Part shown: positions 8,349 through 59,810 of the stretch, in pieces
Layout: every line of letters begins with the position of its first letter
Position numbering within the stretch: the first letter of the stretch is position 1
Assembly (NCBI RefSeq): GCF_035594765.1
Contig: NC_085846.1
Location: 82,013,190 to 82,077,189 of the forward strand
Length of the DNA stretch: 64,000 bases
Source: Anolis carolinensis
Lineage: Eukaryota
Direction: 5' to 3'
Position numbers and translations under genes: made by a program
Notes under the pieces: model-generated
What the model was told of the DNA's origin: nothing
What the model saw: the letters and a program-made list of their open reading frames with translations, nothing else
Databases searched by the model: none

Positions 8349-9309
8349 ATGTCAGCCAGAAAGGGCTATCTGCTCTCCTCGCCCAATTGTCCCGCGGCCA
8401 TGGCGTGCTCCTCGGAGAGCCCCGCTGCCAGCTCCTTCCTGGTGGACTCCTTGATCAGCTCGGCTTCGGGAAGAAGGGACGGCGGAGGAGGAGGAGGCGG
8501 TGGAGAAGGAGGAGGCGGTGATGGAGGAGGAGGCGGAGGCGGCGGCGGCTACTATCCCAACAACAGCGGCGTCTACCTGCCTCAGAGCTCCGAGCTGCCC
8601 TACGGCTTGCAGAACTACGGCCTTTTCCCGGTCCTGAGCAAGCGCCAGGAGCAAGGCCCTCCCCCCAGCATGGCCCCGTCCTCCCACCAGTACATGCCGG
8701 GCATGGACGCCTGGCTCGACGGCCCCAGGTCATGCCGCCTGGAAGAACCACAGAGCCCGCAAGCCACTTCCTGCGCCTTCGCTCCCAGCATCAAGGAGGA
8801 GAGTTCCTACTGTCTCTACGACTCGGACAAGGGCCCCAAGGAGGCGGCGGCCACCGACCTGTCCACCTTCCCGAGGCTCAGCTCGGAGGTCTGTGCCATG
8901 AACAACGGGGTGCCCGTGCCAGGCTACTTCCGCCTGTCCCAAGCCTATGGCGCCGCTAAGAGCACCAACAGCACCTCTTCCTCCTCCTCTTCCTCCTCCA
9001 CCTGCAGCAGCGGCTACAACAGCAACCACCACCACCATCCGCACCAGCACCATCGCCAAATGGTTGCCGAGTCCCCTTTCGCCCCGCAGCCTCCAGGGCG
9101 CTTTGAGAGCCCCCCGGTCTTGCCTCCCTCGCTGTCAGTCCCGGATCAAGGCCGAAAAGAAGGCGAAGAGCCCTCCCCGCCCAGCACTTTGGCTTGCGTT
9201 TCCCAAACTGGGGAGGAAGAAGGCCAGGCGTCTTGCTCCTCGGCTGCGGAAGAACTCTCCCCGGCGCCTTCCGAGAGCAACAAGACCTCCCCAGAGAAAG
9301 GGGCCTTAG
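8349..9309 (+). CDS. HOXA10: HOXA10 exon 1 (joined CDS 8349-9309 + 11898-12172, 411 aa)
   Basis: Begins MSARKGYLL...SESPAASSFLVDSLIS and contains IKEESSYCLYD and VPVPGYFRLSQAYG. Phase-1 donor TTA G|gtgagc at 9309/9310. A second in-frame ATG with strong Kozak context lies at 8400. Confidence 0.96.
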
Positions 9310-9480: not shown

Positions 9481-9714
9481 TGTGTTGTGCTGTTAGTTTT
9501 TCGGGCTGTATGGCTACGTTCCATAAGCATTCTCTCCTGACGTTACGCCCACATCTATGGCAGGCACCCTCAGAGGTTTTGAGGTATATTGGAAACTAAG
9601 CAAGGGAGGTTTATATACCTCTGGAAGGTCCAGGGTGGGAGAAATATGTGGTGAAACGTCAGTAGAGAATGCTTCTGGAACATAGCCATACAACCCGGAA
9701 AACTCACAGCAACC
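9481..9714. mobile_element. Penelope terminal repeat with an inverted partial copy, in the HOXA10 intron
   Basis: Minus arm ~9481-9643 and plus arm ~9646-9714. Target-site duplication AAAAGTACTATT at 9469-9480 and 9715-9726. Confidence 0.85.
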
Positions 9715-11418: not shown

Positions 11419-11567
11419 NNNNNNNNNNNNNNNNNNNNNNNNNNNNNNNNNNNNNNNNNNNNNNNNNNNNNNNNNNNNNNNNNNNNNNNNNNNNNNNNNN
11501 NNNNNNNNNNNNNNNNNNNNNNNNNNNNNNNNNNNNNNNNNNNNNNNNNNNNNNNNNNNNNNNNNNN
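11419..11567. other. Assembly gap in the HOXA10 intron
   Basis: Run of N. Confidence 1.
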
Positions 11568-14746: not shown

Positions 14747-14835
14747 AACTGGTCGGTGATTTAGGTAGTTTCATGTTGTTGGGGCTATGGCTCTCTCTTT
14801 CTCGACAGCACGAAACTGCCTTCATTACTTCAGTT
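14747..14835 (+). ncRNA. MIR196B: miR-196 precursor at the HoxA locus (miR-196b position); mature 5p at 14762-14783
   Basis: TAGGTAGTTTCATGTTGTTGGG with the complementary arm CGACAGCACGAAACTGCCTT, flanked by ACTGGTCGGTGATT and CATTACTTCAGTT. It lies between Hox10 and Hox9. Confidence 0.96.
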
Positions 14836-15199: not shown

Positions 15200-15987
15200 G
15201 TGTTGTCGAAAGCTATCATGGCCGGAATCACTGAGTTGCTGTGAGTTTTCTAGTCTGTATGTCCATGTTCCAAAAACATTCTTTCCTGATGCTTCGCCTG
15301 CATCTATGGCAGGCATCCTCAGAGGTTGGGAGGTCTGTTGGAAAGGAAACAATTGGGTTTATATATTTGTGGAAAGTCCGGGTTGGGAGAAAGAATTCTT
15401 TTTTTTTTTTTGAGGCAGGTGTGGATGTTGCATTTGGCCACCTTGATTAGGATTTAAAAGCCTTTTAACTTCAAGGTCTGGCTGCCTACTGCATGGGAAT
15501 CCTTTGTTGGGAAGTGTTATCTTGCCCTGATTGATTCATGTCTGGAATTCCTCTGTCTTCTAAGTGTTGTTCTTTATTTACTGTCCTGATTTGAGAGTTT
15601 TTAAATACTGGTAGCCAGATTTTGTTCACTTTCATGGTTTTTATTTATTTCCAATATTTCTATTCCGCCCTTCTCACCCGAAGGGATTCAGGGTTTCCTC
15701 CTTTCTGTTGAAATTGTCCATAAGCTTGTGGATTTCAATGGCTTCTCTGTGTAGTCTGACATGTTAGAGTGGTCCAGTATTTCTGCGTCCTCAAATAATA
15801 TGCTTCAAACAACCAGGAAATCTTTCTCCCACCCTGAAGATTCCACAGATATATATAAAACCCCTCTTGCCTAGTTTCCAACAGACCTCACAACCTCTGA
15901 GGATGCCTGCCATAGATGCAGGGGAAACGTCAGGAAAGAATGCTTCTGGAACATGGCCATACAGTCCTGAAAACTCACAGCAACCCA
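15200..15987. mobile_element. Penelope-like element (minus body) with an inverted terminal repeat (plus)
   Basis: Body 15200-~15805, inverted repeat ~15806-15987. TSD GATCTCCCTTCCTT at 15186-15199 and 15988-16001. A short LINE-tail fragment is nested at ~15640-15692. Confidence 0.9.
15894..15934 (+). ncRNA. Near-intact hammerhead motif with the G10.1-C11.1 pair broken
   Basis: CCT-CTGAGGA-T-GCCTGC-catagat-GCAGGG-GAAA-CGTC-AGG; the basal pair of stem II is a G.G mismatch. Confidence 0.6.
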
Positions 15988-17017: not shown

Positions 17018-17404
17018 AGCCCCTTCCACACAGCTGAATAAAATATCACATTATCTGCTTTGGACTGGAATATGATAGTGCGGACTCAGATATCCCAGTT
17101 CAAAGCAAACATTGAGGGATTTTCTGTCTTGATATTCTGGATTATATGACTGTATGGAAGGGCCCTTAGATAATCCAGTTGAAAGCAGATATTGTGGAAT
17201 TTTCTGACTTGATATTCTGGATTATATGACTGTATGGAAGGGCCCTTAGATAATCCAGTTGAAAGCAGATATTGTGGGATTTTCTGACTTGATATTCTGG
17301 ATTATATGACTGTGTGGAAGGGCCCTTAGATAACCCAGTTCAAAGCAGATATATGGGATTTTCTGCCTTGATCTTCTGGGTTATATGGCTGTGTGGAAGG
17401 GCCC
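17018..17404. mobile_element. PIF/Harbinger-type MITE whose 80-bp end is repeated four times
   Basis: Terminal inverted repeats GCCCCTTCCACACAGC and GCTGTGTGGAAGGGCCC. GGCCCTTAGA recurs at 17161, 17241 and 17321. Confidence 0.75.
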
Positions 17405-17405
17405 T

Positions 17406-17535: not shown

Positions 17536-18123
17536 AGGGCCCTAAACCTGTTGGTATGAACCCACGCGTCAAAAGCTCGGTTTTAAGTGTAAAAGTGTAA
17601 AGATTTTCTAAAATACATACATTCATATGTTCGTCAATCCAACTCAAGTTTAGTTAATACAGACTCCTAATATTGGGTGGTTGTTCCATCATGGATCTGA
17701 AACAATTATTTATTTCTTTGTTTTGAAAAACACCCTTGAAGTCCTTCATAATTTGCAAAGTATGACCTCTGAGCATTATTTCTCCAGCTTTTCAGTAGCT
17801 ATGCTAAAGAAAGATAACACTAAACGCCTGTATCTATGTGTGTTAAGGAAGGAATTCGACATTTCATAGGAATTGGCTTACTTATTAGGCTGAATTCGGG
17901 GGGGGGGGGGGGGGGATATAGCTCGAAAATAATTACTGTAATTTAAAGGTGAATGAAATTTTCCAGTAATATGTCCAGCATAGAATTCAAAGAAAATAGT
18001 GAACGCTAAGAAATTTAAAACTCTCAAGTGTTAAAGTATAAAACTGTAAGGTTGCCAATCTTGCATACTTACCAAGAAGGAAGGCCATGGAAGTTGGTGG
18101 GTCATACACACACACATATACAG

Positions 18124-18155
<32 letters not shown>

Positions 18156-21100
18156 TATACATACAGACACACATATAAGACCCACAAACTTCAGTTGGCT
18201 TTCCTTCTTGGTAAGTATGTGTGTATATAAATATACTATTGAGTAAGTGTGTGGATATGAATATATAGTATTTAGTGTGTGTATACACACACACACTAAT
18301 ATATAAATATACACAGACACTAATATATAGAGATATATATACACACTCAAATATATATATCCACACACTTGCTCAATAGTATATTTATACACACATACAG
18401 ACATGAGAGCTGTGAAGGACTATTAGATGATGTTGAAATTGATATAATATTGTAGAAACCGGAAGGAAATAAGGCTGTTTAAAAGTCTCAGAGTGAGTTG
18501 TTGTAGCTTCTGCAACCGGAAATACGTTTACTTATTACTTGGAAGTCCCAAATATTTGTATTTATGGGTAAGAGGCTATGTGGTAGCCGCTGCCTTAAGA
18601 CAAGACCAGAAATGCATTTACTTAAGGAAAAAAAATTATTTCAGTGAGAATGAAGCTCAGCTATAGACCACGCATTTCTTCCGCTTTCATGCTGTGTCTG
18701 TCCTTATATGAAAATTAATCAAGTTGGAAATATACAAGTCTCCTTGGAAATAACATTTCTGCACAGAATAAAGAAACGCGCAGATTATTTATTATCTTTT
18801 TCTATAATTCCAAACCAACTTTTCTCCCCTCTAGATACTTGAATAGTCTTTGTTCAGGAGCCAGCAACGTTAGGAATACAGAGAGATTATTGTTTTGCTC
18901 CAATGTAGTAAATCGAGCCTGATTCTCCCTAATCAGAAATGAAAAGCTGCTGCCATTTCCGAAGCCAAAAATGCAAAAAAAAAAGAAAACATGGGAGGAA
19001 TCCTGCTGTTAAGATTATTTCTTTCCTTCAAGGAGGAAGGAAGTTCTGTGAACATATTTCACAACAGCTGACTCTCGATTTTAAACAAAAAAAATGACGC
19101 AAGGCTTCCCTCTTTCCAGGAAAGACAAAAAGTAATAACACGATACATGTGTTTTTTGTCTTTTTGTTACTGCTATCTCTATGCAGACATAAATAGTTCC
19201 AATTATCTCACGAAAGTAACCATAGTAGCTACCAAATCCTTATGGGAAACGTTATTTTGCGTGTGTAGGTGGGGTAGATTATTATTAACTCCTGCGCCCT
19301 TTTATTTCTGCTCAGATAAGCGAAATGTTAAGGACTTCTTGTAATCGCCAATATTCTGGTGTTTTTAAGGAAGAAGTGTCTATTCTGTTTTTCTCTTTCG
19401 AGATTGGCCTCTTGGAGCACAAGGAGAAAAGACATTAATTGAGACTAATGAAAAACATGCGCTTTCCACACACGAATCCAATTAACACACGATTCTCCTA
19501 CTATTTGACAGCCTCTAGCTGTTTTAGACACACTGGGTAAAAACAAAACGAAACACTAGAACCCTTTCCTTCTTCTCCCCACTCTTAAGCTCGGTTTTTG
19601 AGTCCCAAAAGCCACAGCTAAAGAAGAAAAGAGAAAACAATAATTAAAAAAAGACAGAAATAAAGCCACAGGAATCCGTGGGAGAAGACAAAGCCTTCAA
19701 ATGTCACAGCCACTGAGTATTTCCCCCATTACTTTAATTCACAACACTGGCCTTGATCGGATAGGGCCATATCATTTTATTGTTGTTGTTGTTGTTCTTA
19801 TTCTGGGGGTGGAGAGACTATAATAACCCTCCGCCTCGTCCCCATATTGCTCCCAGAAGCCCCATAGAAAGTGCCAGGGAAACAATAAGTATTCAGACCT
19901 TCTTGGAGAAGGCGATGCCAGAAAAAGGGGGGAGAAATGCCAAGGGGGGAGCAAGGAGGGCTCTCCAATCCAGACATGGTTCAGGAAGGTTCTCCAGGAG
20001 AAGAGGGGTGGAGGAAGCATTACTAAACCCCCACAATCCAACCCATACATGTATACGCTTCCCCAGCTCTAGCATGGCACTAGTTCTTCCTCTCCAGACA
20101 GAAGGGGTGGCTATGCTTCAAGGAAAGAGGCAGGAAGGCTCACATACCAAGAAGCCCCTCTGCAGTCAACTTGATCGAGGCGGGTGGGTGGGTCTCATGG
20201 TTTGTCCTCCAAACAAACATCCATGTTCTGTCCCTTCTCTCTAGCTGCTCTGTTTCCCCCTTTCCAGTTTCGATTGTTCATTTCTTTCTCCACGTGGATG
20301 AAGAAGCCTCCTTCCTCCAAATATATATATACACTAATAGCATTTGGAAGTACTACACACACATGTAACTAGCTCCCAAAGCTGCGTGTTTGTGCCAGAA
20401 TGTCAACGGATCAGCGAGCAACCCGCTGCTGGAGTTTCCCGGAAGGAGGGGGAAAGAAACACAGCGTTGGAGTGGATCTGGAAGTGTGGGTTCGTGGGAA
20501 GGGCTCCCCGATGTGTCTCCGGCGACCCTTGGCTCTTAAGGTGCCCCATAAAGAGCCCCAAACCCCCCCTCTTTGGGCTCTTTCCCCCCTGCCTTCCTCT
20601 CCCCTCGTCTGTTCCGGCGCGTGAAAGGAAAAGAGGCAGATCCGAGGGAGACAGGCTTCTCTTGGATTTGACTTTTCGCCTGCCAGCCTCCCGATCGCTC
20701 TGAACTCAGCGGCACAGTATTATTTACAGTGCAGCTTCCCAAAGTACAACACAATAGTATAATTTAACCTTTCCAGGCACTCGTAAATTTTTACTGCCGC
20801 GAAACACAGCGATGCAAATGAATATGCTCGTCGTTACTGACTTAATAACAACCCGGTGGCTCCCGAGACAATAACTCCTTATGAAATAGAATAAATATAG
20901 ATTTAAATACAGCACGCCGCCCAATGTTATTTTGCTTTTTTCTTTTCTTTTTTATGGCTTCAATTATTGTATAATTTTATGTGAAGGTCTCCCATCAGTA
21001 AAAAAAAATAAAAAAAATAAAATAAAGGAAGCCTGTCTTAGTTTTTCCCCCCTCTCCTTTCTTGGATTCTCTCCCTTTCCCATTTTTATACAGAACTCCA

Positions 21101-21215
21101 GCCTTTGATGGGATGATTAATTATGATATAAAATAGTCTCTTCTATCAAAGGAGGGTAATACCGGGTTGCTGTGAGTTTTCCGGGCTGTGTGGCCATGTT
21201 CCAGAAGCATTCTCT

Positions 21216-21256
21216 CCTGACGTTTCGCCCAAATCTATGGCAGGCATCATCAGAGG
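21216..21256 (-). ncRNA. Minimal type-I hammerhead ribozyme in a Penelope terminal repeat (core intact)
   Basis: Minus strand reads CCT-CTGATGA-T-GCCTGC-catagat-TTGGGC-GAAA-CGTC-AGG: CUGANGA box, stem II, GAAA, palindromic ACGU stem III, GUC cleavage triplet and stem I CCU/AGG. Confidence 0.8.
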
Positions 21257-21727
21257 TTGCTGATGACTGTTGGAGACTAGGCATATCTGTGGAAGGTCCA
21301 GGGTGGGAGAAAGAACTTTTGTCTGTTGGAGGCAAGTGTGAATGTTTCAATCAATCACCTTGATTAACATTGAAAAGCCTTGCAGTTTCAAAGCATGGGT
21401 GCTTCCTGCCTGGGGAATCCTTTGTTGGGAGGTGTTAGCTGGCCCCGATTGTTTCATGTCTGGAACTTCTCTATTTTCGGAGTGTTTTTCTTTATTTATT
21501 GTCCTGATTTTAGAGTTTTTTAAATACTGGTAGCCAGATTTTGTTCATTTTCATAGTTTCCTCCTTTCTGTTGAAATTGTCCACATTGTGGATTTCAGTG
21601 GCTTCTCTGTCTAGTCTGACATGGTGGTTGTTAGAGTGGTCCAGCATTTCTGTTTACTCAAATAATACGTTGTGTCCAGGCTGGTTTATCAAGTGCTCTG
21701 CTATGGCTGACTTCTCTGGTTGAGTTA

Positions 21728-21864
21728 GGACCCTTCCACACAGCCATATAACCCAGAAAATCCCAAAATATCTGCTTTGAACTGGGATATCTGAGTCCAC
21801 ACTGCCATATATTCCTGTTCAAAGCAGATAATATGAGATTTTATTCAGTTGTGTGGAAGGGGTC
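21728..21864. mobile_element. Harbinger-type MITE nested in the Penelope copy
   Basis: TIRs GGACCCTTCCACAC and GTGTGGAAGGGGTC, with a TTA target duplication at 21725-21727 and 21865-21867. Confidence 0.82.
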
Positions 21865-22199
21865 TTAATCTGCAGTGCCTTTCCTGCTCCTTGATTCGTG
21901 TTTGGGCGCTGTCTTAGTCCCCCCCTCTTCTTTTTTGGATTCTCACCCTTCCCCCCCTTTTTTTTTTGCATAGGACGCCAATCTTTGATGGGATGATTAA
22001 TTATGATACAAAATAGTCCCCTCTTTCAAAGGAGGGTACTCATACCCATCCTCCCCTTTCCCCCTCCCTATAAAAAAAGGAGAAAAACCCTAATGTTTTA
22101 ATCTTATTTGCTGGCCACAAAAACCAAAAGTTTGCTTGTCCTGTCCGACTCGCCCCTTTTACATTAAAAAAACCCTATAAAAATGATGACTCGAAAACA

Positions 22200-22380
22200 C
22201 TGACCCATTAATAGCCTGCGGACTGATTTATACTTTATTGTTCTGCCGCCCGGCCACGTGAGGCGCGGCAGCCAATGAGAAGCCCGGTCCGCCTTCAACT
22301 TATTAGGTGACTGTACTTCTTCGCCAGGACCAAGTTGTGACATGAAATCTGCCGTTTCATAATTTCGCCGGGTCTTTGCC
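22200..22380 (+). promoter_or_regulatory. HOXA9 proximal promoter and 5' leader element
   Basis: TGATTTAT (22224), TTTATTG (22234), E-box CACGTG (22255), CCAAT (22272) and TTATTAGGTGACTGTACTT. Confidence 0.7.
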
Positions 22381-22460
22381 TCTCTCTCCTCCTTCCTTCC
22401 TTCCTTTCTTTCTTTCTCCCCCTTCTCTTCTTTTTCCTCCCTTCCCCTTCCGCCCCGGCG

Positions 22461-23070
22461 ATGACTTCCTCGGGGACGCTGAGTAACTACTACGTGGACT
22501 CCTTCCTGCTCCACGAAGGCGGCGAGGAGCTGGGCCCCTCCGCGGCGCGCTACGGCTCGCTGCCTTTGGGCCAAGTGGGCTCCCGGGTCGCGGCCCCCGA
22601 GCACGCCGACTTCGCCGCCTGCAGCTTCCAGGCCAAGGCCTCCTCCTCGGTCTTCTCGGCCTCCTGGAGCGCCCCGCCGCCGCCGCCTCCGCCGCCGCCT
22701 CCGGGCTCCGGCCACGTCTACCACCCCTACGTGCACCACCCGCCCCCGCTGCCCGCCGCCCCCGACGGCAGCAGGTACCTGCGCTCCTGGCTGGAGCCTC
22801 TGCCCGGCGGCTCCTTGGCCTTCCCCGCCTTGCCGCCGCCCGGCCGGCCTTACGGCATCAAGCCCGAGCCGCTCCCGGCCCGGCGGGGGGACTGTCGCAC
22901 TGCCTTCGAGCCGCACAGCAACGCCCTCCCCCTGACTGACTATGCCTGTGGTTCCCCCCCAGCTGAACGGGAGAAGCCCCCCGGAGACGGGCCGCCCTAC
23001 GCCGAAAGCCACGCCGAGAGCGAGGCCGGAGCCGGAGCAGCAGCAGGGGACAAGAACCACATCGATCCCA
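22461..23070 (+). CDS. HOXA9: HOXA9 exon 1 (joined CDS 22461-23070 + 25757-25995, 282 aa)
   Basis: MTSSGTLSNYYVDSFL, DGSRYLRSWLEP, RPYGIKPEPL and LTDYACGSPP motifs. Donor CCC A|gtaagt. Confidence 0.97.
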
Positions 23071-23262
23071 GTAAGTGGGACCCACTGGCGAAGGGAGAGG
23101 GCGGCAGGGAAGAGCCTCCTTGGACTGGCAGGCGGGGAGGGAGGGAGAGAGAAAGAGTGGGGCTTCAAGGTAGTTTTAAGTGCATTTTCATATCCTTTGC
23201 CCTTGTTTTTGTATGTTTATATATTCATATCAATGCATTTGCTCTGTTTTTAGTTGTGTCAC

Positions 23263-24233
23263 GTTTGGATAGTGCTACACTGCCCCACGATCAGTGTGGA
23301 ACCATCCAGTTCAAGTTGCACTGTATAGTTCTACACTGACCATATAATGCAGTTCAAGCTTCATTGTATATAGTTTCTATACTATGCATATAATGCAGTT
23401 CAAGTTGCATTATATAGTTCTACACTGATCCTATAATACAGTTCAAGCTTCATTGTATATAGTTTCTACACTAAGCATATAATGCAGTTCAAGTTGGATT
23501 ATATAGTTCTACACTGATTCTATAATGCAGTTCAAGCTTCACTGTATATAGTTTCTACACTAAGCATATAATGCAGTTCAAGTTGCATTATATAGTTCTA
23601 CACTAACCCTAAAATGCAGTTCAAGCTGCATTGTATAGTTTCTACACTGACCATATAATGCAGTTCAAGCTGCATTGTATATACTTCTACACTAAGCATA
23701 TAATGCAGTTCAAGTTGCATTATATAGTTCTACACTGACCCAAAATGCAGTTCAAGCTGCACTGTATAGTGTCAACATTGACCATATAATGCAGTTCAAG
23801 CTGTATTGTATAGTTTATTTGTTTATTTACCATACTTGTATCCCACCTTTCTCAACCCCCAAAAGGGACTCAAGGCGGCCTTACAAAGGCAACAATTCAA
23901 TGCTGCCTGTATATCTACACCAATGAGTAAACAAACATTAAAACCAACTAATTAAAATATAACATTCAAACAAGAATTAAAATCACATAATCCAAGTCAT
24001 ATTCCAAGTTTCTACACTGAGCATATAATGCAGTTCAAGCTGCATTGTATAGTTCTACACTGAACACATAATGCAGTTCATTGTATAGTTCTGCACTGAA
24101 CATATAATGCAGTTCAAGTTGCTTTGTATAGTTTCTACACTGAGCATATAATGCATCTCAAGATGCATTGTATAGTTCTACACTGAACACATAATGCAGT
24201 TCAAACTGCATTATAGGGTAGTATGGAACCAGC
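23263..24233. repeat. MITE-derived ~41-42 bp minisatellite in the HOXA9 intron, interrupted by a CR1/L2-like 3' tail (~23814-24008)
   Basis: Unit CTACACTGACCATATAATGCAGTTCAAGCTGCATTGTATAGTT repeated many times. The same core occurs in the MITEs at 44157 and 51236. Confidence 0.85.
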
Positions 24234-24450
24234 TTTTAAGTCCCTCATTGAGTCTCTATGTCGGGAGAAAGGCAGGATACACATAAATAAGTACAAAATG
24301 GTAAATAAGTACAAAATGGTTGAGCTGGCAGGGTGCTGGTGTTGTGGGTGCAGGGAAAGGGGCTGCCACACACACTCCCCCTTAGATTGGCTTAGCTAAG
24401 TGGGATCCATCTTGAGTTATGCGGCATTGGCTGGCTTCCCTCCTGCCTTA

Positions 24451-24451
<1 letters not shown>

Positions 24452-24513
<62 letters not shown>
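24452..24513. repeat. (TAA)n microsatellite, one of many (also ~10965-11020, 11254-11297, 37122-37161, 51151-51205, 51781-51826, 53492-53545)
   Basis: Read directly. Confidence 0.95.
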
Positions 24514-25676
24514 TTGTTATTTGCCTCTCCTCATGGTTGGAGGAGTGATTCAACATAGTTAAACTCACACACAGAAAAAGCAAAATGCCACTGAACTAAA
24601 AGGCATCTCGCCACACACACACACACCCCCCCATCAGGGTGTTTCAGAAGGAGGCGGTAGGCATATCGTCCACAAAATGCAGCAGCTGTGGCGAAGGGCG
24701 AACAGGACATTTCTCTGTGTGCTCTCCCTCCTCATGTTTAGATGCCTGAACCTCCCAAGGCTGGGTCAGGCACAATGAAGCGTGATGGGATGTGTAGTTC
24801 TCCTCTCCAGCTCGCCCTCGGTGGTGACAGTGGGCAGCACAGTGTACACTCATGGCGACAAGCTTCAGTTCTGGAGTGGGATGGGAAAAGAGTTAGTGGG
24901 AGGTAAGGTTTAGTTGGTTGAGAGGGGGGGGGGGAGAAAGAGGGGGAGAGGGCGAGGATGGGGGTCCTGAAGAGCCCAGAAATAGAGAGAGCAGGAGGAA
25001 CAAAACATTGGAGGTGAATCTGATTCCTTTGTGACGAAGCTAGGAAAACCATGAGCGACAAGACTGTTGGGGGTGGGGGTAGGAGGGACATCCGTCCTTT
25101 CATTTACTCCCTTCTTGGTTGGTTGGGATTTTTTTATGTACCTATATAAATAATCTCTCCCCACGAGCTAGATTAACAGTGAGGCAGGCAACCAAAGTCA
25201 GGCTCAGCAGGTTCCTCAGCCAAGCCCTGTAACGTGTGAATGGGTGGGCGTGAGTGTGCCCCCGTTGTCGCCTGAGAAAGCTGGTGACATCACAGGCCGA
25301 AAAATGGGGCCGGGGACAGGAACACTCGTGTTTTTAAAGGGTGTAAAGGAGAGAAGGAGGCAAATCCACAGGGTCCTTCTGGGGTAAAGGAGAGAGGGAG
25401 AGGGAGGCAGAGAGAGGTGGACATGTTGTATGTAAACAGTATGCAAGAGAGAAAGGGAAGAGGGGAGGTAGTAGTAAACCCCCATGGGGGGGGGGGTTAC
25501 TGCAATTCATTCTGCCTGACCTCTCCATGCGTCCATTGTTGGCTGCCCATCCTGTCTGTCTGTCCCAATGAAAGGCATGTCATAAAACGCCCATAGCAGG
25601 GCACTCGGGATGCTTCAGGAGAAGGGGGGCATCTTGCATCCCCATCCAGGCGGGTTGGGGATGCCAGAGTAACGCT

Positions 25677-25677
25677 G

Positions 25678-25716
<39 letters not shown>
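25677..25716. repeat. (GTT)n microsatellite ~40 bp upstream of the HOXA9 exon 2 acceptor
   Basis: Read directly. Confidence 0.95.
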
Positions 25717-25756
25717 CTTTCCCCCTGCTCCAACCTCTGGCCTCCTTGCCTTGCAG

Positions 25757-25995
25757 ACAACCCGGCGGCCAACTGGCTCCACGCGCGCTCCACGCGGAAA
25801 AAGCGCTGCCCTTACACCAAGCACCAAACGCTGGAGTTGGAGAAGGAGTTTTTGTTCAACATGTATCTGACCAGGGACCGACGGTATGAGGTGGCCCGGC
25901 TGCTGAATTTAACCGAGAGACAGGTCAAAATCTGGTTCCAGAACCGGAGGATGAAAATGAAGAAGATCAACAAGGACCGAGTGAAGGAGGACTGA
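25757..25995 (+). CDS. HOXA9: HOXA9 exon 2, homeodomain
   Basis: Acceptor ttgcag|AC. Translates (N)[78 protein letters not shown]. Confidence 0.98.
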
Positions 25996-27525
25996 GTGGG
26001 TCTCGCGTGGCAGGTTCCTCGTGGCTCAGAAACACCCCTCCTCTCCCCCTTTTCACCTACGAATCCCTCCATCTTCCAATGAGACTCTGTCCACTCCAGG
26101 CCTCGCCTGACTCACTTTTTAATTTTTATTTAATTTTTTCATTTTATACAAAAACTACTACTACAACAAAATCCTTTGACGGTTTGTTCTCTTGGCTCTT
26201 GAATGTACCTCGCCAGCGTGCAGGGAGATAAATGGCTGGGACCTGGTGCTATTGAAGAGGTACCACGACTTTAAATCTATCTCTATACCTACAGACAGGG
26301 AAAGAAATAGATCTGATCCCTCATCCTAGGCAAGACAAACACGGGAGGCTGGTTTTGTTGGCTTGACTAAATCTACCTGTCCTTCATTGAAAGAAAAAAA
26401 GAGAAAGAATGAAAGTAAACTACCTTTTTTAATGCACAATTCTTTACGGACTGTATAGGTTAGTCGAAAAATAGTTAATTTTATTTGCTTTTTGCGCGGC
26501 AGGCAGAGAGAGGTCTGCTTTTAATACTTGAACACTGTGTTTTTAATTGTGGTAATTATGTTTGTGACTCGGTTTTTTGTGCTTGGGTGCTGTATCCGAT
26601 GTGGTCCTGTAAGCTAGAATTCAATTTGAACTCAGGTTGTTTAATATAAAGGTTTGCATAAAGGATAGCTCTGTAGTGTACAAACCTTCTCCTTCCCTGC
26701 ATCATTAGCCAGTTAATCTTGAATTGCAATGGGTAGGCTGCAGGGCTGCAATTTGCTCTGTCCCTATCCCAACGAGAGGAAAAAATATGTATATATATCC
26801 ATATACATATGTATATATGAATATATATGGAAGAGGAAAGGGCTCATGGCTCCTTTGACCCATTTGCTTTCGAACCAATCCTTTAAGTGCACACACTTGA
26901 TCTATATATATAGTACAGTCTTCGTCAGTTGTGTATATATCTATATATACATAAATATAATCTATATATTAAAGAAAGAAACCCTTAATTATCGGACTAG
27001 CTTGAATATTGTTTTGCACCCGTGAGCAGTTTTCAGATACCGGAGCTATGCCTATTATGTGGGGGGGAAATAAAGACAAGCAAAGAAAGGCAACTACCTA
27101 TGGTTTACGTTTTAAGTTTAATCAAATCGTTGGATTCTTACTGTAATGAAAGTTTAATTTTATTGATAATAAATTATACGCTCGAAAAACTACCTTTGGT
27201 TATTGTAGATTTGTATCAATTATTAAAAAATAAAAATAGCCCAAAATATATATATCCTGGAAGTTATGTTTATGCTGAAGCTACACTGTATCTTTGCAAT
27301 AGTTACCTCATGGCCTACTGACCAAATAGTTGTGTCCGAATGATATTTAACTCTTTTTTTTGCTAAATAAAATATATATTGATTCTTTTGTATACATATT
27401 TGTGCTGTTTAAGATTATTAAGGACACACTGCGCCACCAAACCCACCCAGAATGATATATATGGCGTCCCTCTTGGAGAACAATAGAAACCTAACCTTGT
27501 TACTTCGAGACAATTTGAAGACTCA

Positions 27526-27670
27526 GGGCCCTTCCACACAGTCACATAACCCAGAATATCAAGGCAGAACATTCCTACAATATCTGTTTTGAGCTGGGTT
27601 ATCTGAGTCCACACTGCCATGTATTCCAGTTCAATAATGTGGAATTTTATTCAGCAGTGTGGAAAAGGTC
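27526..27670. mobile_element. Harbinger-type MITE, same family as 17018 and 21728
   Basis: GGGCCCTTCCACACAG ... CAGTGTGGAAAAGGTC ends and a shared internal sequence. Confidence 0.75.
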
Positions 27671-28208
27671 TCTTTGTCCAGATGTGTATTGGAGAGGGAT
27701 ATTGAACAAGGAGGTTGTGGCCAGCTATGAAGGATGTTCCCAACCCATGACCATTCAGTGACAAGACAGAATCCCATGAGGAAAGAAAGCTGTAGTAGAT
27801 ACTTAGGATAAAACATTGGAAATGATTTATTCCATTCCGGAAGCAGAAGAAGGCTTTCGAAAACAAAATATTGGAAAAACAATGCCATCCAGTTAGCTTC
27901 CCTAGTCAAGATCTGATTTATTTTTTGCCTTCTAGAGACGAAGAAATCTTTGGGGTAGGAAATGCCAGGCTTTAGCTTTATATAGAAAGCAAAACCCTTG
28001 GGGTATGAAATGCCAGTCTTTCCCATTGTGAAAGAAAGCCATTTAGCTCGCTTTCTCTAGTTCCAGTTGTTTCTACTCAACTAATAAACCAGCTGCAGGG
28101 TTATTGGGGTTGTATGTGTGTGTTGTCGAAGGCTAAGTCCAGACTTATATCTGACAATAACAGTCGCCATTTTTTTAAAGTGCTTTGATTTTTAAATAAT
28201 AATAATTT

Positions 28209-28315
28209 TGTGCTGTCGAAGGCTTTCATGGCTGGAATCACTGGGTTGCTGTGCATTTTCCGGGCTGTATGACCAAGCTACAGAAGCATTTTCTCCTGAC
28301 GCTTCACCAACATCT
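28209..28315 (-). mobile_element. Short Penelope terminal fragment
   Basis: Family terminus TGTGCTGTCGAAGGCTTTCATGG, flanked by a duplicated TAATAATAATTTTGT. Confidence 0.8.
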
Positions 28316-29485
28316 AATAATAATTTTGTTTATGTGGTTGCTGTTAGCCCTGTTTCTGAAATGGTGTTATTTTCGTACATGGCTTGGGATTGGGAATAAA
28401 CCGACAGCAAATACAAGGAAATATCTTTGGGGTGAAAGAGTTGGTTGAAGCTGTTGAAGAACAAAAGGAATGGCAGGAAGTCTGTCTCAGTCTCACTGGC
28501 TCAGCCATAGAAGAGTCTGGCGTCGGGGAAAACACCACTTTGAGTTGGATTTGGGGTGTCGTTTGGGGTGGGCTGAGGGAAGATAAAGGGGCTGGCTGGC
28601 TATTTCTGCCCAACAGTGTGTTTCTTCTGCAGCTTCCGCAGAATGAATGCCTTGGTTTATTTTAAAAGCGTGGAGGGAGAAAGAGAGAGAGAGAGAGAGA
28701 AAATATAACACCCCAAGCCAACCCACTTCCAGCTAACAAGCCTTGGCTGAAGATGCTATTAGGAAAAATTCAGAGCCATAGAGTGCCATAAAAGAAAATG
28801 ACGGCTGTAACCGTTTATGGGGTGTAAAATACTGGAGGGTTTAAAGACAAGAACTCTGGTTTTACGTTGGAATATCCAGAAAGGAGTGTGATAGGGTTTT
28901 TTTTTTCCAAAGGGGAGGGGTTGTTGTTTCCCCTTTCTGGTCAGAGGTGTTCAATTAGTTCAAAAAGGAACTAGTTTTCGTCTAGCTAATTTTTTTTTAG
29001 AGGAAGAAAGAGGAAGGGGCTGGTTGTTAAGGGGGAGAAGGGACCCCTAATTTATGCCTGGCCCCATGGTTTGGGATGTTGGGACGCCCTCTGTTGTTGC
29101 AGACGGTGGGGACTTCAAAGAACCGGCCTCAGAAGCGTGTAATAAATGCCGGGTCTGCAAACTGTCTGGAATTCGGCCCTTAATGAGTTTACAACTGTCC
29201 AGCCACAATTAAGATTTCTCGACAAAAGCCCCCTTTCATTTGTTTTGTCTGGCTGTTTCAGATAAAGCGGGTCTGCGGAAATAGCTCGCTTTTATTAGCC
29301 CCGCTCTCTTTCCTCTGAAATGTAGGACGTTTATCTTTAATGAATTTGCCGCTGGAACCTTTAGCAAAAAAATAATAATGGCTACTGCAAGGCAAGGCAG
29401 ATTATTCAATGCATTTGCAGCGTGGTTGGTATTAGAAATATGGGCTCCTCGGCTTGGTTTTATGGCTTGTAATGACTACAATGTA

Positions 29486-29500
29486 ACAGCAGATGGCACT
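29486..29500 (+). promoter_or_regulatory. CTCF motif between HOXA9 and HOXA7 (C7|9-type boundary candidate)
   Basis: ACAGCAGATGGCACT, same orientation as the HOXA6/A5 site, at the end of a repeat-free block (~28760-29560). Confidence 0.6.
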
Positions 29501-29781
29501 GTTGGTCCATGAAAACAAGACGGATTCCGCCATGAAAGCAAAGGGACGGATTCTAAAATGTCGACTTTAAAAAACCAGTACATGCGGTTGAGAAACCAGT
29601 GGCTCGATTTTAACAAAGGAGGGAAGGAATGACTGTAAATATGTGCTCTGGTACCTAAATGGCTGCGTCCACAGTTAATTATATTGGGTTTAATCTATCT
29701 GTGGTTGTAGTCACCCATTGTGCTAAATTCTGAGGATGTTACTTTCTGAAATTTCAGTGGTTAAACTATTTTTATTTGATA

Positions 29782-30219
29782 TGTAGTCAAAGGCTTTCTT
29801 GGCCGGAATCTTGCTGTGAGTTTTCCGGGTGCTATGGCCATGTTCCAATAGCATTCTTTCCTGACGTTTCGCCCACATCTATGGCAGGCATCCTCAGAGG
29901 TTGTGAGATATATTGGAAACTAGGCAAGGGAGGATTCTATATCTGTGGAAAGTCCAAGGTGGGAGAAAGAACTTTTGTCTGTTGGAGGCTAGCGTGAATG
30001 CTGCAATTAATCACCTTGATTAGCATTGAAAAGGCTTGCAGCTTCAAAGCCTGGCTGATTCCTGCCTAGGGCTATCCTTTGTTAGGAGGTGTTCACTGAC
30101 CCTGATTGTTTCCTGTCTAGAATGCCCCTGTCTTCTGGGTGTTGTGTTTTATTTACTGTCCTGATTTTAGAGTTTTTTAAATATTGGTAGCCAGATTTTG
30201 TTCATTTTCATTTTTTCCT
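29782..30219 (-). mobile_element. Penelope-like element fragment carrying an intact hammerhead
   Basis: Colinear with the other copies. Confidence 0.88.
29860..29900 (-). ncRNA. Minimal type-I hammerhead ribozyme in a Penelope terminal repeat (matches family consensus)
   Basis: Minus strand reads CCT-CTGAGGA-T-GCCTGC-catagat-GTGGGC-GAAA-CGTC-AGG. Confidence 0.82.
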
Positions 30220-36667: not shown

Positions 36668-36789
36668 TGAGGATGCCTGCCATAGATGTAGGTGAAACGT
36701 CAGGAGAGAATGCTCCTGGAATATGGCCATACAGCCCGGAAACTCATAGCAACCCAGTCATACCGGCCATGAAAGCCTTAGACAACACA
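36668..36789 (+). mobile_element. Penelope terminal fragment truncated inside the hammerhead core
   Basis: Starts at TGAGGATGCCTGCC (C3 and the 5' strand of stem I are lost) and ends GACAACACA. Confidence 0.85.
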
Positions 36790-37163: not shown

Positions 37164-37244
37164 AATGTCTCAAGACATGGAAAATCAGAGTAGAGTGGTG
37201 AGGGGACTTCTCCCTGCTCAGAACTATACAGAAAGTACCTAATT

Positions 37245-38310
37245 CTACTTTCTGTACAGTTCTGAGTGGGGAGACGTTCTCTACCCACTAAGAAAATAGC
37301 AAACATAAAATAATATTAAAAGGAGGGGTTAAAGAAGAGGACAAAAATCAAGGTTTCAATGTGTTGTGGCAGGCTTTCATGGCCGGAATCACTGGGTTGC
37401 TGTGAGTTTTCCGAGCTATATGGCTATGTTCTAGAAGCATTATCTTCTGAAGTTTTGCCCATAGCTATGGCAGGCATCCTCAGAGGTTGTGAGGTATGCT
37501 GGAAACTAGGCAAGGGAAGTTTATATATCTGTGGAAGGTACAAGGTGGGAGAGAGAACTCTTGTCTGTTGGAGGCAAGTGTGAATGTTGCATGCAAATCT
37601 ACTTTCTGTACAATTCTGAATGGGGAGAAGTCCCCTACCCACTAAGAAAATAGCAAACATTTAATAGTATTAAAAGGAGGGATTACAGAAGAGAACAAAA
37701 ATCTAGGTTTCAGTTTCGAAGTCCTGGTTTTTGAAGTTTATTAGGGGAGCCCAAGCAAATAGAACTGGGGAGGGGAAATGGAGAAAAAATGGTAAAAATA
37801 TATAAAAGAAAGGTGTTGTTGAAGGCTTTCACAGCCGGAATCACTGGGTTGCTGTGAGTTTTCCCTTGTGTATGACCATATTCCAGGAGCATTCCCTCCT
37901 GACGTTTTACCCACATCTATGGCAGGCATCCTCAGAGGTTTTGAGGTATATTGGAAGCTAGGCAAGGGAAGTTTATATATTTGTGGAAGGTCCAAGATGG
38001 GAGAAAGAACTCTTATCTGTTGGAGGCAAGTGTGAATGTTGCAATTGGACTTTCTGTACAATTCTGAATGGGGAGAAGTGCCATACCCACTAAGAAAATA
38101 GCAAAAATAAAATAGTAATAAAAGGAGGGGCTGAAGAAGACGACAAAAATCAAGGTTAGAGTTTCCAAGGTGTTGTCGAAGGCTTTCACAGCAAGAATCA
38201 CCGGGTTGCTGTGAGTTTTCCGGGCTGTATGGCCATGTTCCAGAAGCAAATGTCAGAAGAAGACGCATATGGAACATGGCTATACAATCAGGAAAACTCA
38301 CAACAACCCA
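37245..38310. mobile_element. Three tandem units of a ~115-bp unique flank plus a Penelope terminal repeat, upstream of HOXA7
   Basis: Flank CTACTTTCTGTACA...AATCAAGGTT at 37245, 37599 and 38049. PLE repeats at 37360-37591, 37813-38048 and 38170-38310, the last with an inverted end. Confidence 0.87.
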
Positions 38311-38539
38311 AAAAAGGGAAGGGTGAAAGGACACAAATCCAAGTTTCTAAGCGCGGGTTTTGAGTTTCCTAGGGGAGAGCCTTCCTCCCCTCCTCCGCGC
38401 GGGTGGGCGCTTGACGCGGGTTGAGACCCCTTCCTTGCCTTTGAATTTGCGACTCCCCTTCGAGGTCCACGCGAGGTCCTCTCCCTCTCTCTCCCTCTCT
38501 CTCTCCCACCTGTGATGCGGGGCGGAGATTGGAGGACGG

Positions 38540-40432: not shown

Positions 40433-40959
40433 TGTTGTCGAAGGCTTTCATGGTCGGAATCACTGGGTTGCTCTGAGTTCTCCGGGCGGTATGGCCATGT
40501 TCCTGAAGCATTCTCTCCTGACGTTTCCTCCACATCTATGGCAGGCATCCTCAGAGGTTGTGAGGTCTATTGGAAACTAGACTAGGGAGGTTTATATATC
40601 TGTGGAAAGCCCACAACCCTGTTCTGTTGGAGGCAGGTGTGAATGCTACAATTAAACATCTTGATTAGCATTGAAAAGCCTTGCAGTTTCAAGGCCTGGC
40701 TGATTCTTGCTTGGGGGAATCCTTTGTTGGGAGGTGTTAACTTGCCCTGATTGTTTAATGTCTGGAACTCCTGTTTTCAGAGTGTTGTTCTTTATTTACT
40801 GTCCTGATTTTAGAGCTTTTTAATACTGGTCGCCAGATTTTGTTCATTTTTATGGTTTCCTCACAACCTCTGAAGATGCCTGCCATAGTTGTGGGTGAGA
40901 TGTCAGGAGAAAATGCTTCTGGAACATGGCCATATAATCTGGAAAATTTACTGCACCCA
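40433..40959. mobile_element. Penelope-like element with an inverted terminal repeat, in the HOXA7 intron
   Basis: Minus body to ~40860, plus arm 40859-40959. TSD CTGAAATAGATCT at 40421-40433 and 40960-40972. Confidence 0.9.
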
Positions 40960-49392: not shown

Positions 49393-49714
49393 TGTGTTGT
49401 CGAAGGCTTTCATGGCCGGAATCACTGGGTTGCTGTGAGTTTTCCTAGGCTGTATGGTCATGTTTCAGAAGCATTCTCTCCTGACACTTCACACTATAGC
49501 AGGCATCTTAAGAGATTGTGAGGTCTGTTGGAAACTGGGCAACATTCACCCTGCCTCAAACAGACAAGAGTTCCTTCTCCCATCCTGGACATTCCACAGA
49601 GATATAAATCCCACTTGCATCGTTTCCAACAGACCTCACAACCTCTGCCATAGATGCAGGCGGAACGTCAGGAGAAAATGCTTCTGGAACATGGCCATAC
49701 CGCCCGGAAAACTC
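49393..49714. mobile_element. Inverted pair of Penelope terminal repeats ~690 bp upstream of HOXA6
   Basis: Minus arm 49393-~49541 and plus arm ~49542-49714. Both hammerheads are damaged. Confidence 0.85.
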
Positions 49715-50399: not shown

Positions 50400-50841
50400 A
50401 TGAGTTCCTATTTCGTGAATCCCCCTTTCCCGGGGAGCTTGCCCAATGGGCCCGAGACTCCCTTCCTGGGGCAGCTGCCCCTCTACCCGGCGGGCTACGA
50501 GGCGCTGAGGCACTTCCCCACCTCCTATGGGTCCGGAAGCTTGCCGGACAAGACCTACTCCTCCCCTTGCTTCTACCAGCAGTCCAGCAACACCACAGTC
50601 ATCTCCTGCAACGACTATGGCGCCTCGTGCTTCTACTCGGAGAAGGAGCTGGGCGGGGGCGCTTCCTCCTCGCCCAAGCCCCGGGCCCACCACCCAGGGG
50701 ACTACCTGCCCTGCTTCGCCAACGCCAACCAGCCCTACAAGCCCGAGGCAGGCCCCCACAAAACCCTCAGCGAGGAAGGCAGCGACCGGAAGTACGCCAA
50801 CCCTGTTTATCCCTGGATGCAAAGGATGAACTCCTGCGCGG
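50400..50841 (+). CDS. HOXA6: HOXA6 exon 1 (joined CDS 50400-50841 + 53149-53405, 232 aa)
   Basis: [15 protein letters not shown]...FLGQLPLY...[13 protein letters not shown]. Donor GCG G|gtaagt. Confidence 0.96.
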
Positions 50842-55289: not shown

Positions 55290-55485
55290 NNNNNNNNNNN
55301 NNNNNNNNNNNNNNNNNNNNNNNNNNNNNNNNNNNNNNNNNNNNNNNNNNNNNNNNNNNNNNNNNNNNNNNNNNNNNNNNNNNNNNNNNNNNNNNNNNNN
55401 NNNNNNNNNNNNNNNNNNNNNNNNNNNNNNNNNNNNNNNNNNNNNNNNNNNNNNNNNNNNNNNNNNNNNNNNNNNNNNNNNNNNN
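55290..55485. other. Assembly gap over the HOXA5 proximal promoter and 5'UTR
   Basis: Run of N. Confidence 1.
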
Positions 55486-59678: not shown

Positions 59679-59810
59679 NNNNNNNNNNNNNNNNNNNNNN
59701 NNNNNNNNNNNNNNNNNNNNNNNNNNNNNNNNNNNNNNNNNNNNNNNNNNNNNNNNNNNNNNNNNNNNNNNNNNNNNNNNNNNNNNNNNNNNNNNNNNNN
59801 NNNNNNNNNN
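59679..59810. other. Assembly gap
   Basis: Run of N. Confidence 1.

What the first reader, a model, noticed from the sequence alone, without database searches (positions are those of the whole stretch)
21216..29900. Hammerhead ribozymes carried into a Hox cluster by Penelope repeats; two intact copies bracket HOXA9 on the antisense strand
Seen: the dominant repeat contains CCT-CTGANGA-T-GCCTGC-catagat-GYRGGC-GAAA-CGTC-AGG. This is a type-I hammerhead with all core nucleotides, a GUC cleavage site, stem I CCU/AGG (extendable by CUC/GAG across a bulge) and a minimal stem III made of the palindrome ACGU. The 3' strand of stem II differs between copies (GTGGGC at 29871, GCAGGC at 15296 and 49656, GTAGGT at 36688) but still pairs with GCCTGC. 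Cores are intact at 21216-21256 and 29860-29900, both on the minus strand. Established: Penelope-like retroelements carry minimal hammerheads that cleave best as dimers through the palindromic stem III. Inference: antisense RNA across HOXA9 (mammals transcribe HOXA10-AS-type RNAs in this interval) could be cut at these sites, and two such copies on one RNA could form the dimer.
Basis: partly seen in the sequence, partly recalled or inferred. Interest (0 to 1): 0.85.

Follow-up and report, generated by a model that had tools for sequence, protein, structure and literature searches.

The report
Penelope transposon hammerheads flanking lizard HOXA9
The two hammerhead-ribozyme motifs beside HOXA9 are real, but they are the already published ribozyme of a common lizard jumping gene (a Poseidon-type Penelope element), they sit in two broken-off copies of it, and nothing shows that they act on Hox RNAs.

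Summary
Observation confirmed. Complete minimal type-I hammerhead motifs lie on the minus strand at 21216-21256 and 29860-29900. The first is 1.2 kb upstream of the HOXA9 start codon and the second is 3.9 kb downstream of its stop.

They belong to the window's commonest repeat: about 21 fragments, 14 of which cover the motif. This repeat is the 3' end plus unit junction of a Poseidon-type Penelope-like element. The 29860 motif is identical, 41 of 41 bases, to the tandem junction of the published Anolis Poseidon_Ac consensus. The start codon inside the ribozyme, the cut site 26 nt after it, the two classes of 3' end and the ~36-nt tail all match published anatomy.

Twelve of the 14 copies have lost the core, mostly at its two CpGs. 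Neutral decay predicts 0.5-1 intact copy, and 2 are seen.

The functional idea is unsupported:
- Rfam hammerhead models do not score the motifs.
- The active fold is not the predicted fold, as monomer or as dimer.
- The sites are 8.6 kb apart.
- The published element's ribozyme cut only when its own protein was added.

This scan had already noted Penelope hammerheads 97 times in this genome, twice in other Hox clusters. Verdict: an ordinary, known feature.

The parts
21216..21256 (-). Hammerhead motif HH1: CCU-CUGAUGA-U-GCCUGC-CAUAGAU-UUGGGC-GAAA-CGUC-AGG. The predicted cut lies between 21219 and 21218 on the minus strand.
   Evidence: The core is intact. Helix II has 5 pairs (2 G-U) plus one C-U mismatch. 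It differs at 2 of 41 positions from the family majority.
29860..29900 (-). Hammerhead motif HH2: CCU-CUGAGGA-U-GCCUGC-CAUAGAU-GUGGGC-GAAA-CGUC-AGG. The predicted cut lies between 29863 and 29862 on the minus strand.
   Evidence: It is identical, 41/41, to the end-to-start junction of the published Poseidon_Ac consensus.
21161..21728 (-). 5'-truncated Poseidon-type PLE copy that carries HH1. It consists of 3' UTR, the unit junction with the hammerhead, and the first ~85 nt of the next unit's ORF. It has the short 3' end (...CAGCAACCCGGT) abutting ATTA.
   Evidence: Extent; 3' junction; the Poseidon_Ac 3' UTR and ORF-start strings are found in register.
29776..30219 (-). 5'-truncated Poseidon-type PLE copy that carries HH2. 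It has the long 3' end with the ~36-nt tail (GATTCCGGCCAAGAAAGCCTTTGACTACA), followed by AT-rich target DNA.
22461..25995 (+). HOXA9 coding region. Exon 1 starts at ATG 22461, and the homeobox exon ends with the stop at 25993-25995. The two motifs lie on either side of it, on the opposite strand.
   Evidence: ORF list and homeodomain location.
40517..40557 (-). Third copy that still passes a relaxed descriptor, but it has lost the G10.1-C11.1 pair (GUGGAG in place of GUGGGC).
15868..15980 (+). Sense-strand copy 1.1 kb downstream of mir-196. Its core is intact except C11.1 to G. It is listed as an example of the 12 decayed copies.

Best explanation
These are two independent, 5'-truncated insertions of a Poseidon-type Penelope-like retrotransposon in a lizard HOXA cluster.

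Anatomy of each copy. Each copy keeps the element's last few hundred bases of 3' UTR, the junction to the next tandem unit, and the first ~85 or ~120 nt of that unit's ORF. The published element starts reverse transcription in that part of the ORF.

Where the ribozyme sits. The element's own minimal hammerhead straddles the unit junction. C3 to G8 are the last bases of one unit. The AUG of the next unit is A9, the unpaired U and G10.1. The cut site is 26 nt after the AUG.

Role in the element. There the motif is a weak ribozyme that depends on dimer formation or on the element's protein, and its role in transposition is unsettled.

Role in the Hox cluster. These copies are most likely fossils. 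They decay neutrally, fastest at the two CpGs of the core. These two happen still to have an intact core, and they have no role in HOXA9 regulation.

Shown: the motif, its family, the anatomy and the decay pattern. Inferred: lack of host function.
For: - Family identity. The published Poseidon_Ac consensus ends ...cctcacaacctctgagg and begins atgcctgccatagatgtgggcgaaacgtcagg, so the junction equals HH2 at 41/41. A 17-nt 3' UTR string and a 30-nt ORF-start string from that record hit 9 and 7 repeat copies in register, against 0.01 and 0 expected.
- Published anatomy matched. [quoted passage not shown] Reverse transcription starts in an AC-rich region of the ORF, with an optional 30-40 bp tail. 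The window copies show exactly two classes of 3' end, with and without a ~36-nt tail.
- Structural hallmarks of PLEs. The copies show variable 5' truncation with a common 3' end and five head-to-head inverted pairs.
- Features of PLE minimal hammerheads. There is an unpaired nt after A9, a G10.1-C11.1 pair, a long helix II, a short helix I and a palindromic ACGU.
- Decay. 12 of 14 copies are broken, and 36% of core CpG positions are changed against 12% of non-CpG core positions. Neutral decay predicts 0.5-1 intact copy against 2 seen.
- No two-sided covariation, and every one of the 500 shuffles reached the observed values.
- Folding. The hammerhead fold scores -2.9 and -7.5 kcal/mol against minimum free energies of -11.8 and -13.7. 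In HH1 the CUGAUGA is locked in an 8-bp hairpin with the upstream GUCAUCAG. The active dimer scores -13.1 against a dimer minimum of -29.1.
- Published tests. The ribozyme showed no cleavage without the element's own protein, and no RNA-seq ends were found at the cut site.
Against: - HH2 has 0 changes in 41 nt although the rest of its copy differs from the majority at 11%. The uncorrected P is 0.0086, about 0.1 after allowing for 12 copies.
- Pooled over the ten copies without deletions, I count 32 of 410 motif positions changed (7.8%, from the rows). That is somewhat less than the 7-18% seen elsewhere in those copies. Constraint in the source elements can explain this, but host-level constraint is not excluded.
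- Several small runs guessed to be RNA hold half or more of the words of 20300-22400, so the region may be transcribed. The strand is unknown.
- Nearest-neighbour folding ignores the tertiary contacts and proteins that real hammerheads use.
- Cleavage was not assayed.
Confidence: 0.87

Rival explanations
1. An antisense Hox RNA is transcribed over one or both sites and is cut there, either as an intramolecular dimer of the two copies or with the help of Penelope protein supplied in trans by active elements. The transposon ribozymes would then process a Hox lncRNA.
For: Both cores are complete and on the same strand. HH2 is letter-perfect against the experimentally cleaving Poseidon_Ac motif. 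Antisense lncRNAs are common in vertebrate Hox clusters, and HOXA10-AS lies between HOXA9 and HOXA10. Runs of unclear type hold much of the HOXA9 upstream region.
Against: No minus-strand RNA was shown. No listed mammalian antisense RNA crosses HOXA9 so as to carry both sites. The sites are 8.6 kb apart and would be joined only by a 4-bp helix. The active folds are far from the predicted minimum. Rfam models give no hit. PLE minimal hammerheads are inactive as monomers and weak as dimers. The Anolis one needs its own protein, and no RNA-seq ends were seen at the cut site. The survival of two intact copies fits chance.
Confidence: 0.05
2. The fragments matter as DNA rather than as ribozymes. 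The retained junction region of a PLE (the pseudo-LTR) carries the element's internal promoter. The copies could then start minus-strand transcription, or act as regulatory or chromatin elements near HOXA9, with the hammerhead a passenger.
For: PLE pseudo-LTRs are reported to hold the promoter and transcription start. The copies keep exactly this region. TE load in Anolis Hox clusters has been discussed in relation to Hox expression.
Against: The copies are about 9-18% diverged from the family majority. Nothing distinguishes these two copies from the other ~19 fragments in the window.
Confidence: 0.06
3. A chance look-alike: the motif is not a hammerhead at all, only a string that resembles the core.
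For: Rfam hammerhead covariance models do not score it even on 121-nt stretches at E up to 10. There is no two-sided covariation within the window.
Against: The same 41-mer is the experimentally tested hammerhead of Poseidon_Ac. There, C3G and G8C abolish cleavage and the double mutant restores it. The motif has every feature that defines PLE minimal hammerheads. The descriptor finds none in shuffles.
Confidence: 0.02

Closest known systems
Hammerhead of Poseidon_Ac / PAc, the Poseidon-clade Penelope-like element of Anolis carolinensis (Arkhipova 2006 Repbase entry; Frangieh et al. 2024, PMC11167929)
   Same: The HH2 41-mer is identical to the junction of tandem Poseidon_Ac units, and HH1 differs at 2 nt. 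Also shared: the start codon at A9-U-G10.1, the cut site 26 nt after the AUG, the homologous 3' UTR, 3' ends in the AC-rich part of the ORF, and the ~36-nt tail.
   Different: The window copies belong to an older, diverged relative. After codon ~20 they read ..GGAAAACTCACAGCAACCC, against ..gaaagacatacaacaaccc in Poseidon_Ac, and they differ from their own majority at 7-18%. They are short fragments without the RT-endonuclease ORF, and they lie singly rather than in tandem.
Minimal hammerheads of metazoan Penelope-like elements (Cervera and de la Pena 2014, PMC4209133; Lunse et al. 2017, as cited in PMC6765202)
   Same: Type I with no real helix III, a palindrome at 15.1-16.1 (ACGU), an unpaired nt between A9 and 10.1, a G10.1-C11.1 pair, a 6-bp helix II and a short helix I. 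They are dispersed as single motifs from truncated elements, and some lie as pairs on opposite strands.
   Different: Helix I here is only 3 contiguous pairs, against 4-5 described. That paper named turtles and snakes among reptiles, not lizards.
Non-LTR retrozymes (tandem hammerhead repeats giving circular RNAs; de la Pena lab 2020, PMC7229834; Li et al. 2026 preprint)
   Same: Hammerheads related to PLE pseudo-LTRs, in vertebrate genomes that also hold PLEs.
   Different: Retrozymes are head-to-tail arrays a few hundred nt apart, so that two ribozymes excise a unit. Here two separate insertions lie 8.6 kb apart with a gene between them, and no unit is defined by them.
Transposon invasion of squamate Hox clusters (Feiner 2019, PMC6791295, and work cited there)
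   Same: A lizard HOXA cluster with intergenic regions expanded by transposable elements. In this window about 21 PLE fragments lie between HOXA10 and HOXA5.
   Different: That paper does not mention Penelope elements, hammerheads or antisense RNA (0 occurrences each).

Membership tests
PLE minimal hammerhead (min-HHR) | Catalytic core C3 U4 G5 A6 N7 G8 A9 ... G12 A13 A14 A15.1 ... U16.1 H17 | tested here: met
   All positions are present in HH1 and HH2. They are absent or changed in the 12 other copies.
PLE minimal hammerhead (min-HHR) | Unpaired nucleotide between A9 and 10.1, and a G10.1-C11.1 closing pair | tested here: met
   The sequence reads CUGANGA-U-G...C-GAAA in both copies. The feature is described.
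PLE minimal hammerhead (min-HHR) | Long helix II (6-8 bp) | tested here: met
   HH2 has 6 pairs (2 G-U). HH1 has 5 pairs plus a C-U mismatch.
PLE minimal hammerhead (min-HHR) | Short helix I of 4-5 bp | tested here: inconclusive
   There are only 3 contiguous pairs (CCU/AGG). An extension across a 4x1 loop is 3 bp in the family majority but 2 bp in each intact copy.
PLE minimal hammerhead (min-HHR) | No helix III hairpin; palindromic 15.1-16.1 that allows a dimer | tested here: met
   ACGU is present in both copies. The dimer is not the predicted minimum-energy form.
PLE minimal hammerhead (min-HHR) | Self-cleavage after H17 | not testable with these tools
   This needs a bench assay. The identical Poseidon_Ac motif cut only with the element's protein added.
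Rfam hammerhead families (type I, II, III, HH9, HH10 covariance models) | Score at or above the family's gathering threshold | tested here: not met
   There was no hammerhead hit at gathering score or at E up to 10, on the whole window or on 121-nt stretches around each site. A plausible reason, from my own knowledge and not tested here, is that these models were built on hammerheads that have a helix III hairpin, which this motif lacks.
Poseidon-type Penelope-like element (fragment of) | Sequence homology to a described PLE across the 3' UTR, the junction and the ORF start | tested here: met
   HH2 matches the Poseidon_Ac junction at 41/41. The 17-nt and 30-nt strings of that record are found in 9 and 7 copies in register.
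Poseidon-type Penelope-like element (fragment of) | Variable 5' truncation, common 3' end, optional 30-40 bp tail, adjacent inverted 5'-truncated copy | tested here: met
   5' ends fall at several positions and all 3' ends fall in two classes about 36 nt apart. Head-to-head pairs lie at 9644/9650, 15800/15821, 38248/38248, 40862/40864 and 49541/49541. The hallmarks are described.
Poseidon-type Penelope-like element (fragment of) | ORF with reverse transcriptase and GIY-YIG endonuclease | not testable with these tools
   The window holds only fragments of 570 bp or less. The source element in this genome cannot be fetched with the collections on hand.
Non-LTR retrozyme | Head-to-tail tandem units, each with a hammerhead, that yield a unit-length excised or circular RNA | tested here: not met
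   The two intact motifs are in separate insertions 8.6 kb apart with different 5' and 3' ends.

The most novel reading that the evidence does not exclude
A minus-strand Hox RNA that runs over 21216-21256 or 29860-29900 is cut at the transposon's hammerhead when Poseidon protein from active elements is present. Transposon activity would then be coupled to the processing of an antisense RNA next to HOXA9 in lizards.
Probability: 0.04. Interest if true: 0.75.

Novelty: already known. Interest (0 to 1): 0.15.

Why it matters
If the ribozymes cut a Hox antisense RNA, that would be a rare case of a transposon-borne catalytic RNA wired into a developmental gene cluster, and a new link between transposon activity and body patterning in squamates. 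As the evidence stands, it is a clean example of something already described. Lizard genomes are full of Penelope fragments, each of which carries a decaying copy of the element's minimal hammerhead. Hox clusters of anole-like lizards have taken up many such fragments. The practical value is as a filter for the scan. This motif string, with the 3' UTR upstream and the ORF start downstream, marks a Poseidon-type junction fragment and need not be followed up each time.

Tried and rejected
- Rfam scans at gathering score and at E up to 10, on the whole window and on 121-nt stretches, gave no hammerhead hit. The only hit near HH1 was a meaningless 11-bit Fluoride match.
- Covariation test on 14 copies: no pair changed on both sides, and all 500 shuffles reached the observed values. 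The GUGGGC and GCAGGC variants are one-sided changes between wobble and Watson-Crick pairs, probably marks of subfamilies.
- RNA evidence: the look-up of sequencing runs listed no holder on record as RNA.
After that, no query, pattern or term holding those letters was sent to any search tool. Local scripts still read the whole window file. I could therefore not test strand, ends or level of any RNA.
- Lunse et al. 2017 (PMC5785218) is not held. I cite it only through the review PMC6765202.
- A search of the supplements of PMC11167929 for the motif string found nothing, because the GenBank file breaks the sequence into blocks of ten. Reading the file solved it.
- A full alignment of window copies to Poseidon_Ac was left out.
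- No consensus of the element was built beyond what DNA alignment prints for the ~100-nt stretch.
- Orientation bias of the copies (about 10 minus to 4-5 plus insertion events) was considered as a sign of selection. I dropped it as not significant.


Full report
**Setting**

The window is a HOXA cluster on the + strand.
- HOXA10 exon 1 starts at 8349.
- mir-196 lies at 14753-14831 (Rfam 78.7 bits).
- HOXA9 exon 1 starts at ATG 22461, and its homeobox exon ends with the stop at 25993-25995.
- HOXA7 starts at about 38710, HOXA6 at 50400 and HOXA5 at 55595.

Three N runs (11419-11567, 55290-55485, 59679-59810) were left alone. Earlier notes of this scan call the genome a lizard.

**The observation**

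Read on the minus strand, 21256-21216 is CCUCUGAUGAUGCCUGCCAUAGAUUUGGGCGAAACGUCAGG. On the same strand, 29900-29860 is CCUCUGAGGAUGCCUGCCAUAGAUGUGGGCGAAACGUCAGG.
- A strict pattern for the two core boxes matches only these two places, with none in 100 shuffles.
- A descriptor I wrote for minimal hammerheads finds these two and one weak third site at 40517-40557. It finds none in 50 shuffles or in the reversed sequence.

The two sites flank HOXA9 on the opposite strand. One is 1.2 kb upstream of the ATG and the other 3.9 kb downstream of the stop.

Small corrections:
- The CUC/GAG extension of helix I is complete in the family majority but is only 2 bp in each of these two copies.
- Helix II of the first copy has a C-U mismatch.

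**What the repeat is**

The motif lies in the window's commonest repeat, with about 21 fragments at 72-98% identity to the copy used as query. The copies share a 3' end and are cut off at different 5' positions. Five of them meet a second, inverted, 5'-truncated copy head to head: at 9644/9650, 15800/15821, 38248, 40862/40864 and 49541. Craig et al. 2021 list these as hallmarks of Penelope-like elements.

The decisive link is a published record. The Repbase consensus of Poseidon_Ac from Anolis carolinensis is given as a supplement of Frangieh et al. 2024. It ends ...cctcacaacctctgagg and begins atgcctgccatagatgtgggcgaaacgtcagg. Joined as in a tandem, these give exactly the 41-mer at 29860-29900. 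The 21216 copy differs at two positions.

A 17-nt string of that record's 3' UTR and a 30-nt string of its ORF start occur in 9 and 7 of the window's copies. They lie in register, upstream and downstream of the motif.

The published anatomy also fits:
[quoted passage not shown] Here the AUG is A9, the unpaired U and G10.1.
- The cut site is 26 nt after the start codon, and I count the same here.
- Reverse transcription starts in an AC-rich part of the ORF.
- A 30-40 bp tail is optional.

The window copies end in just two ways: at ...CAGCAACCC, or about 36 nt further at ...GACAACACA. The copy with HH1 (21161 to about 21728) has the short end next to ATTA. The copy with HH2 (about 29776 to 30219) has the tail, followed by AT-rich DNA.

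Each copy is therefore a fragment made of 3' UTR, the unit junction with the hammerhead, and the first codons of the next unit. After about codon 20 the window family departs from Poseidon_Ac, so it is an older relative and not that family itself.

**Is the motif a member of the known ribozyme class?**

Cervera and de la Pena 2014 define the metazoan PLE minimal hammerhead as follows:
- the core;
- an unpaired base after A9;
- a G10.1-C11.1 pair;
- a long helix II;
- a short helix I;
- no helix III, but a palindrome.

All of these are met here, except that helix I is shorter (3 contiguous pairs) than the 4-5 they describe.

The Rfam hammerhead models do not score either site, even on 121-nt stretches at E up to 10. 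A plausible reason, from my own knowledge and untested here, is that those models were built on hammerheads with a helix III hairpin, which this motif lacks.

**Are these two copies special?**

Of 14 copies that cover the motif, 12 have lost at least one essential position or carry a deletion. The two CpGs of the core (C11.1-G12 and C15.2-G16.2) are hit most. Among core positions, 36% of CpG positions are changed against 12% of the others.
- From the rates in the flanks I expect 0.5 to 1 intact copy in 14, and 2 are seen.
- Against the rest of its own copy (11% changed), HH2 with 0 of 41 changes has P = 0.0086. That is about 0.1 after allowing for 12 copies.
- HH1, with 2 of 41 changes, has P = 0.30.
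- No base pair shows a change on both sides, and shuffles do as well as the real alignment.

Pooled over the ten copies without deletions, the rows add up to 32 of 410 motif positions changed (7.8%). That is a little less than in the rest of those copies. Constraint in the source elements, which the majority-rule comparison cannot separate from decay after insertion, is enough to explain this.

**Would they work?**

Predicted folds do not favour the active form.
- The hammerhead secondary structure scores -2.9 kcal/mol (HH1) and -7.5 (HH2). The minima are -11.8 and -13.7.
- In those minima CUGA pairs with UCAG around the cut site.
- In its 76-nt context, the CUGAUGA of HH1 is locked in an 8-bp hairpin with GUCAUCAG just upstream.
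- Fold z-scores are unremarkable, from -0.3 to -1.7.
- The dimer through ACGU/ACGU with both helices II scores -13.1, against -29.1 for the best predicted dimer.

On a hypothetical single RNA the partners would be 8.6 kb apart.

The literature points the same way:
- PLE minimal hammerheads are inactive as monomers and weak as dimers in vitro.
- The Anolis Poseidon hammerhead showed no cleavage without the element's protein. C3G and G8C abolished cleavage and the double mutant restored it.
- That cleavage was not needed for insertion in vitro.
- No RNA-seq reads began or ended at the cut site.

**Transcription**

I could not test this.
- The look-up of sequencing runs found 20 runs of one organism that hold the HOXA9 upstream stretch, but none is on record as RNA.
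- Some of these runs are small (11-27 million letters) yet hold half the words. That would fit RNA or targeted DNA. Contigs give no strand.
- A review of Hox antisense RNAs lists HOXA10-AS as running from HOXA9 towards HOXA10. It lists no antisense RNA across HOXA9, and it does not mention reptiles or lizards at all.

An RNA that carries both sites would have to start beyond 29900 and run antisense through the whole of HOXA9.

**Verdict**

The feature is already known:
- the very sequence has been published and tested;
- PLE hammerheads in vertebrates have been described since 2014;
- transposon-rich Hox clusters in anoles are on record.

This scan holds 97 earlier notes on Penelope hammerheads in this genome, two of them on other Hox clusters. 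The proposed role in cutting Hox antisense RNA has no support from anything I could compute and some evidence against it. It remains a low-probability idea that stranded RNA and end-mapping data could settle.

Noticed in passing
window 14753-14831 (+): A mir-196 precursor (Rfam RF00256, 78.7 bits, E 6.6e-17) lies between HOXA10 and HOXA9, as mir-196b does in other vertebrates. It fixes the cluster's identity and strand.
   Followed up: partly
window 38200-38309 and 49424-49714: Head-to-head inverted pairs of Penelope fragments form long hairpins. They explain the sub-threshold microRNA-like Rfam hits there: mir-960 on both strands at 38203-38308 and MIR2118 at 49494-49665. If transcribed they would give double-stranded RNA.
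   Followed up: partly
window 37201-37282 (-): A near-perfect hairpin of about 35 bp per arm scores 45 bits on the mir-616 model (E 1e-6, far below that family's gathering score of 100). It lies about 110 bp from a Penelope fragment. Its nature is unknown; it may be a small inverted-repeat element.
   Followed up: no
window 15868-15980 (+): A Penelope fragment lies on the sense strand 1.1 kb downstream of mir-196. Its hammerhead core is intact except C11.1 to G. It is the only near-intact copy that would be read in the ribozyme's orientation by sense Hox or pri-miR-196 transcripts.
   Followed up: partly
window 21033-21158 and 21909-22038: A direct duplication of about 130 bp (79.7% identity) flanks the HH1 Penelope copy together with a second repeat at 21727-21865. 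It may be a long target duplication from the insertion, but this was not resolved.
   Followed up: partly
window 17020-17405, 21727-21865, 27525-27671: Another repeat family forms a tandem array with a period of about 80 bp at 17020-17405. Single related units lie next to the HH1 copy and downstream of HOXA9.
   Followed up: no
window 18031-18400: A long (TG)n/(TA)n microsatellite gives a cluster of spurious microRNA hits: mir-297, mir-5014, mir-3149 and mir-568.
   Followed up: no
window 37741-38334 (-): A 197-aa ORF is made by two Penelope fragments read through in the element's own frame. The peptide that starts inside the hammerhead (MPAIDVG..SG..N..G.W....ENSQQP plus the tail ..DS.CESL.QHL) appears twice. 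It is not a gene. It shows that the tail is coding sequence of the source element.
   Followed up: partly
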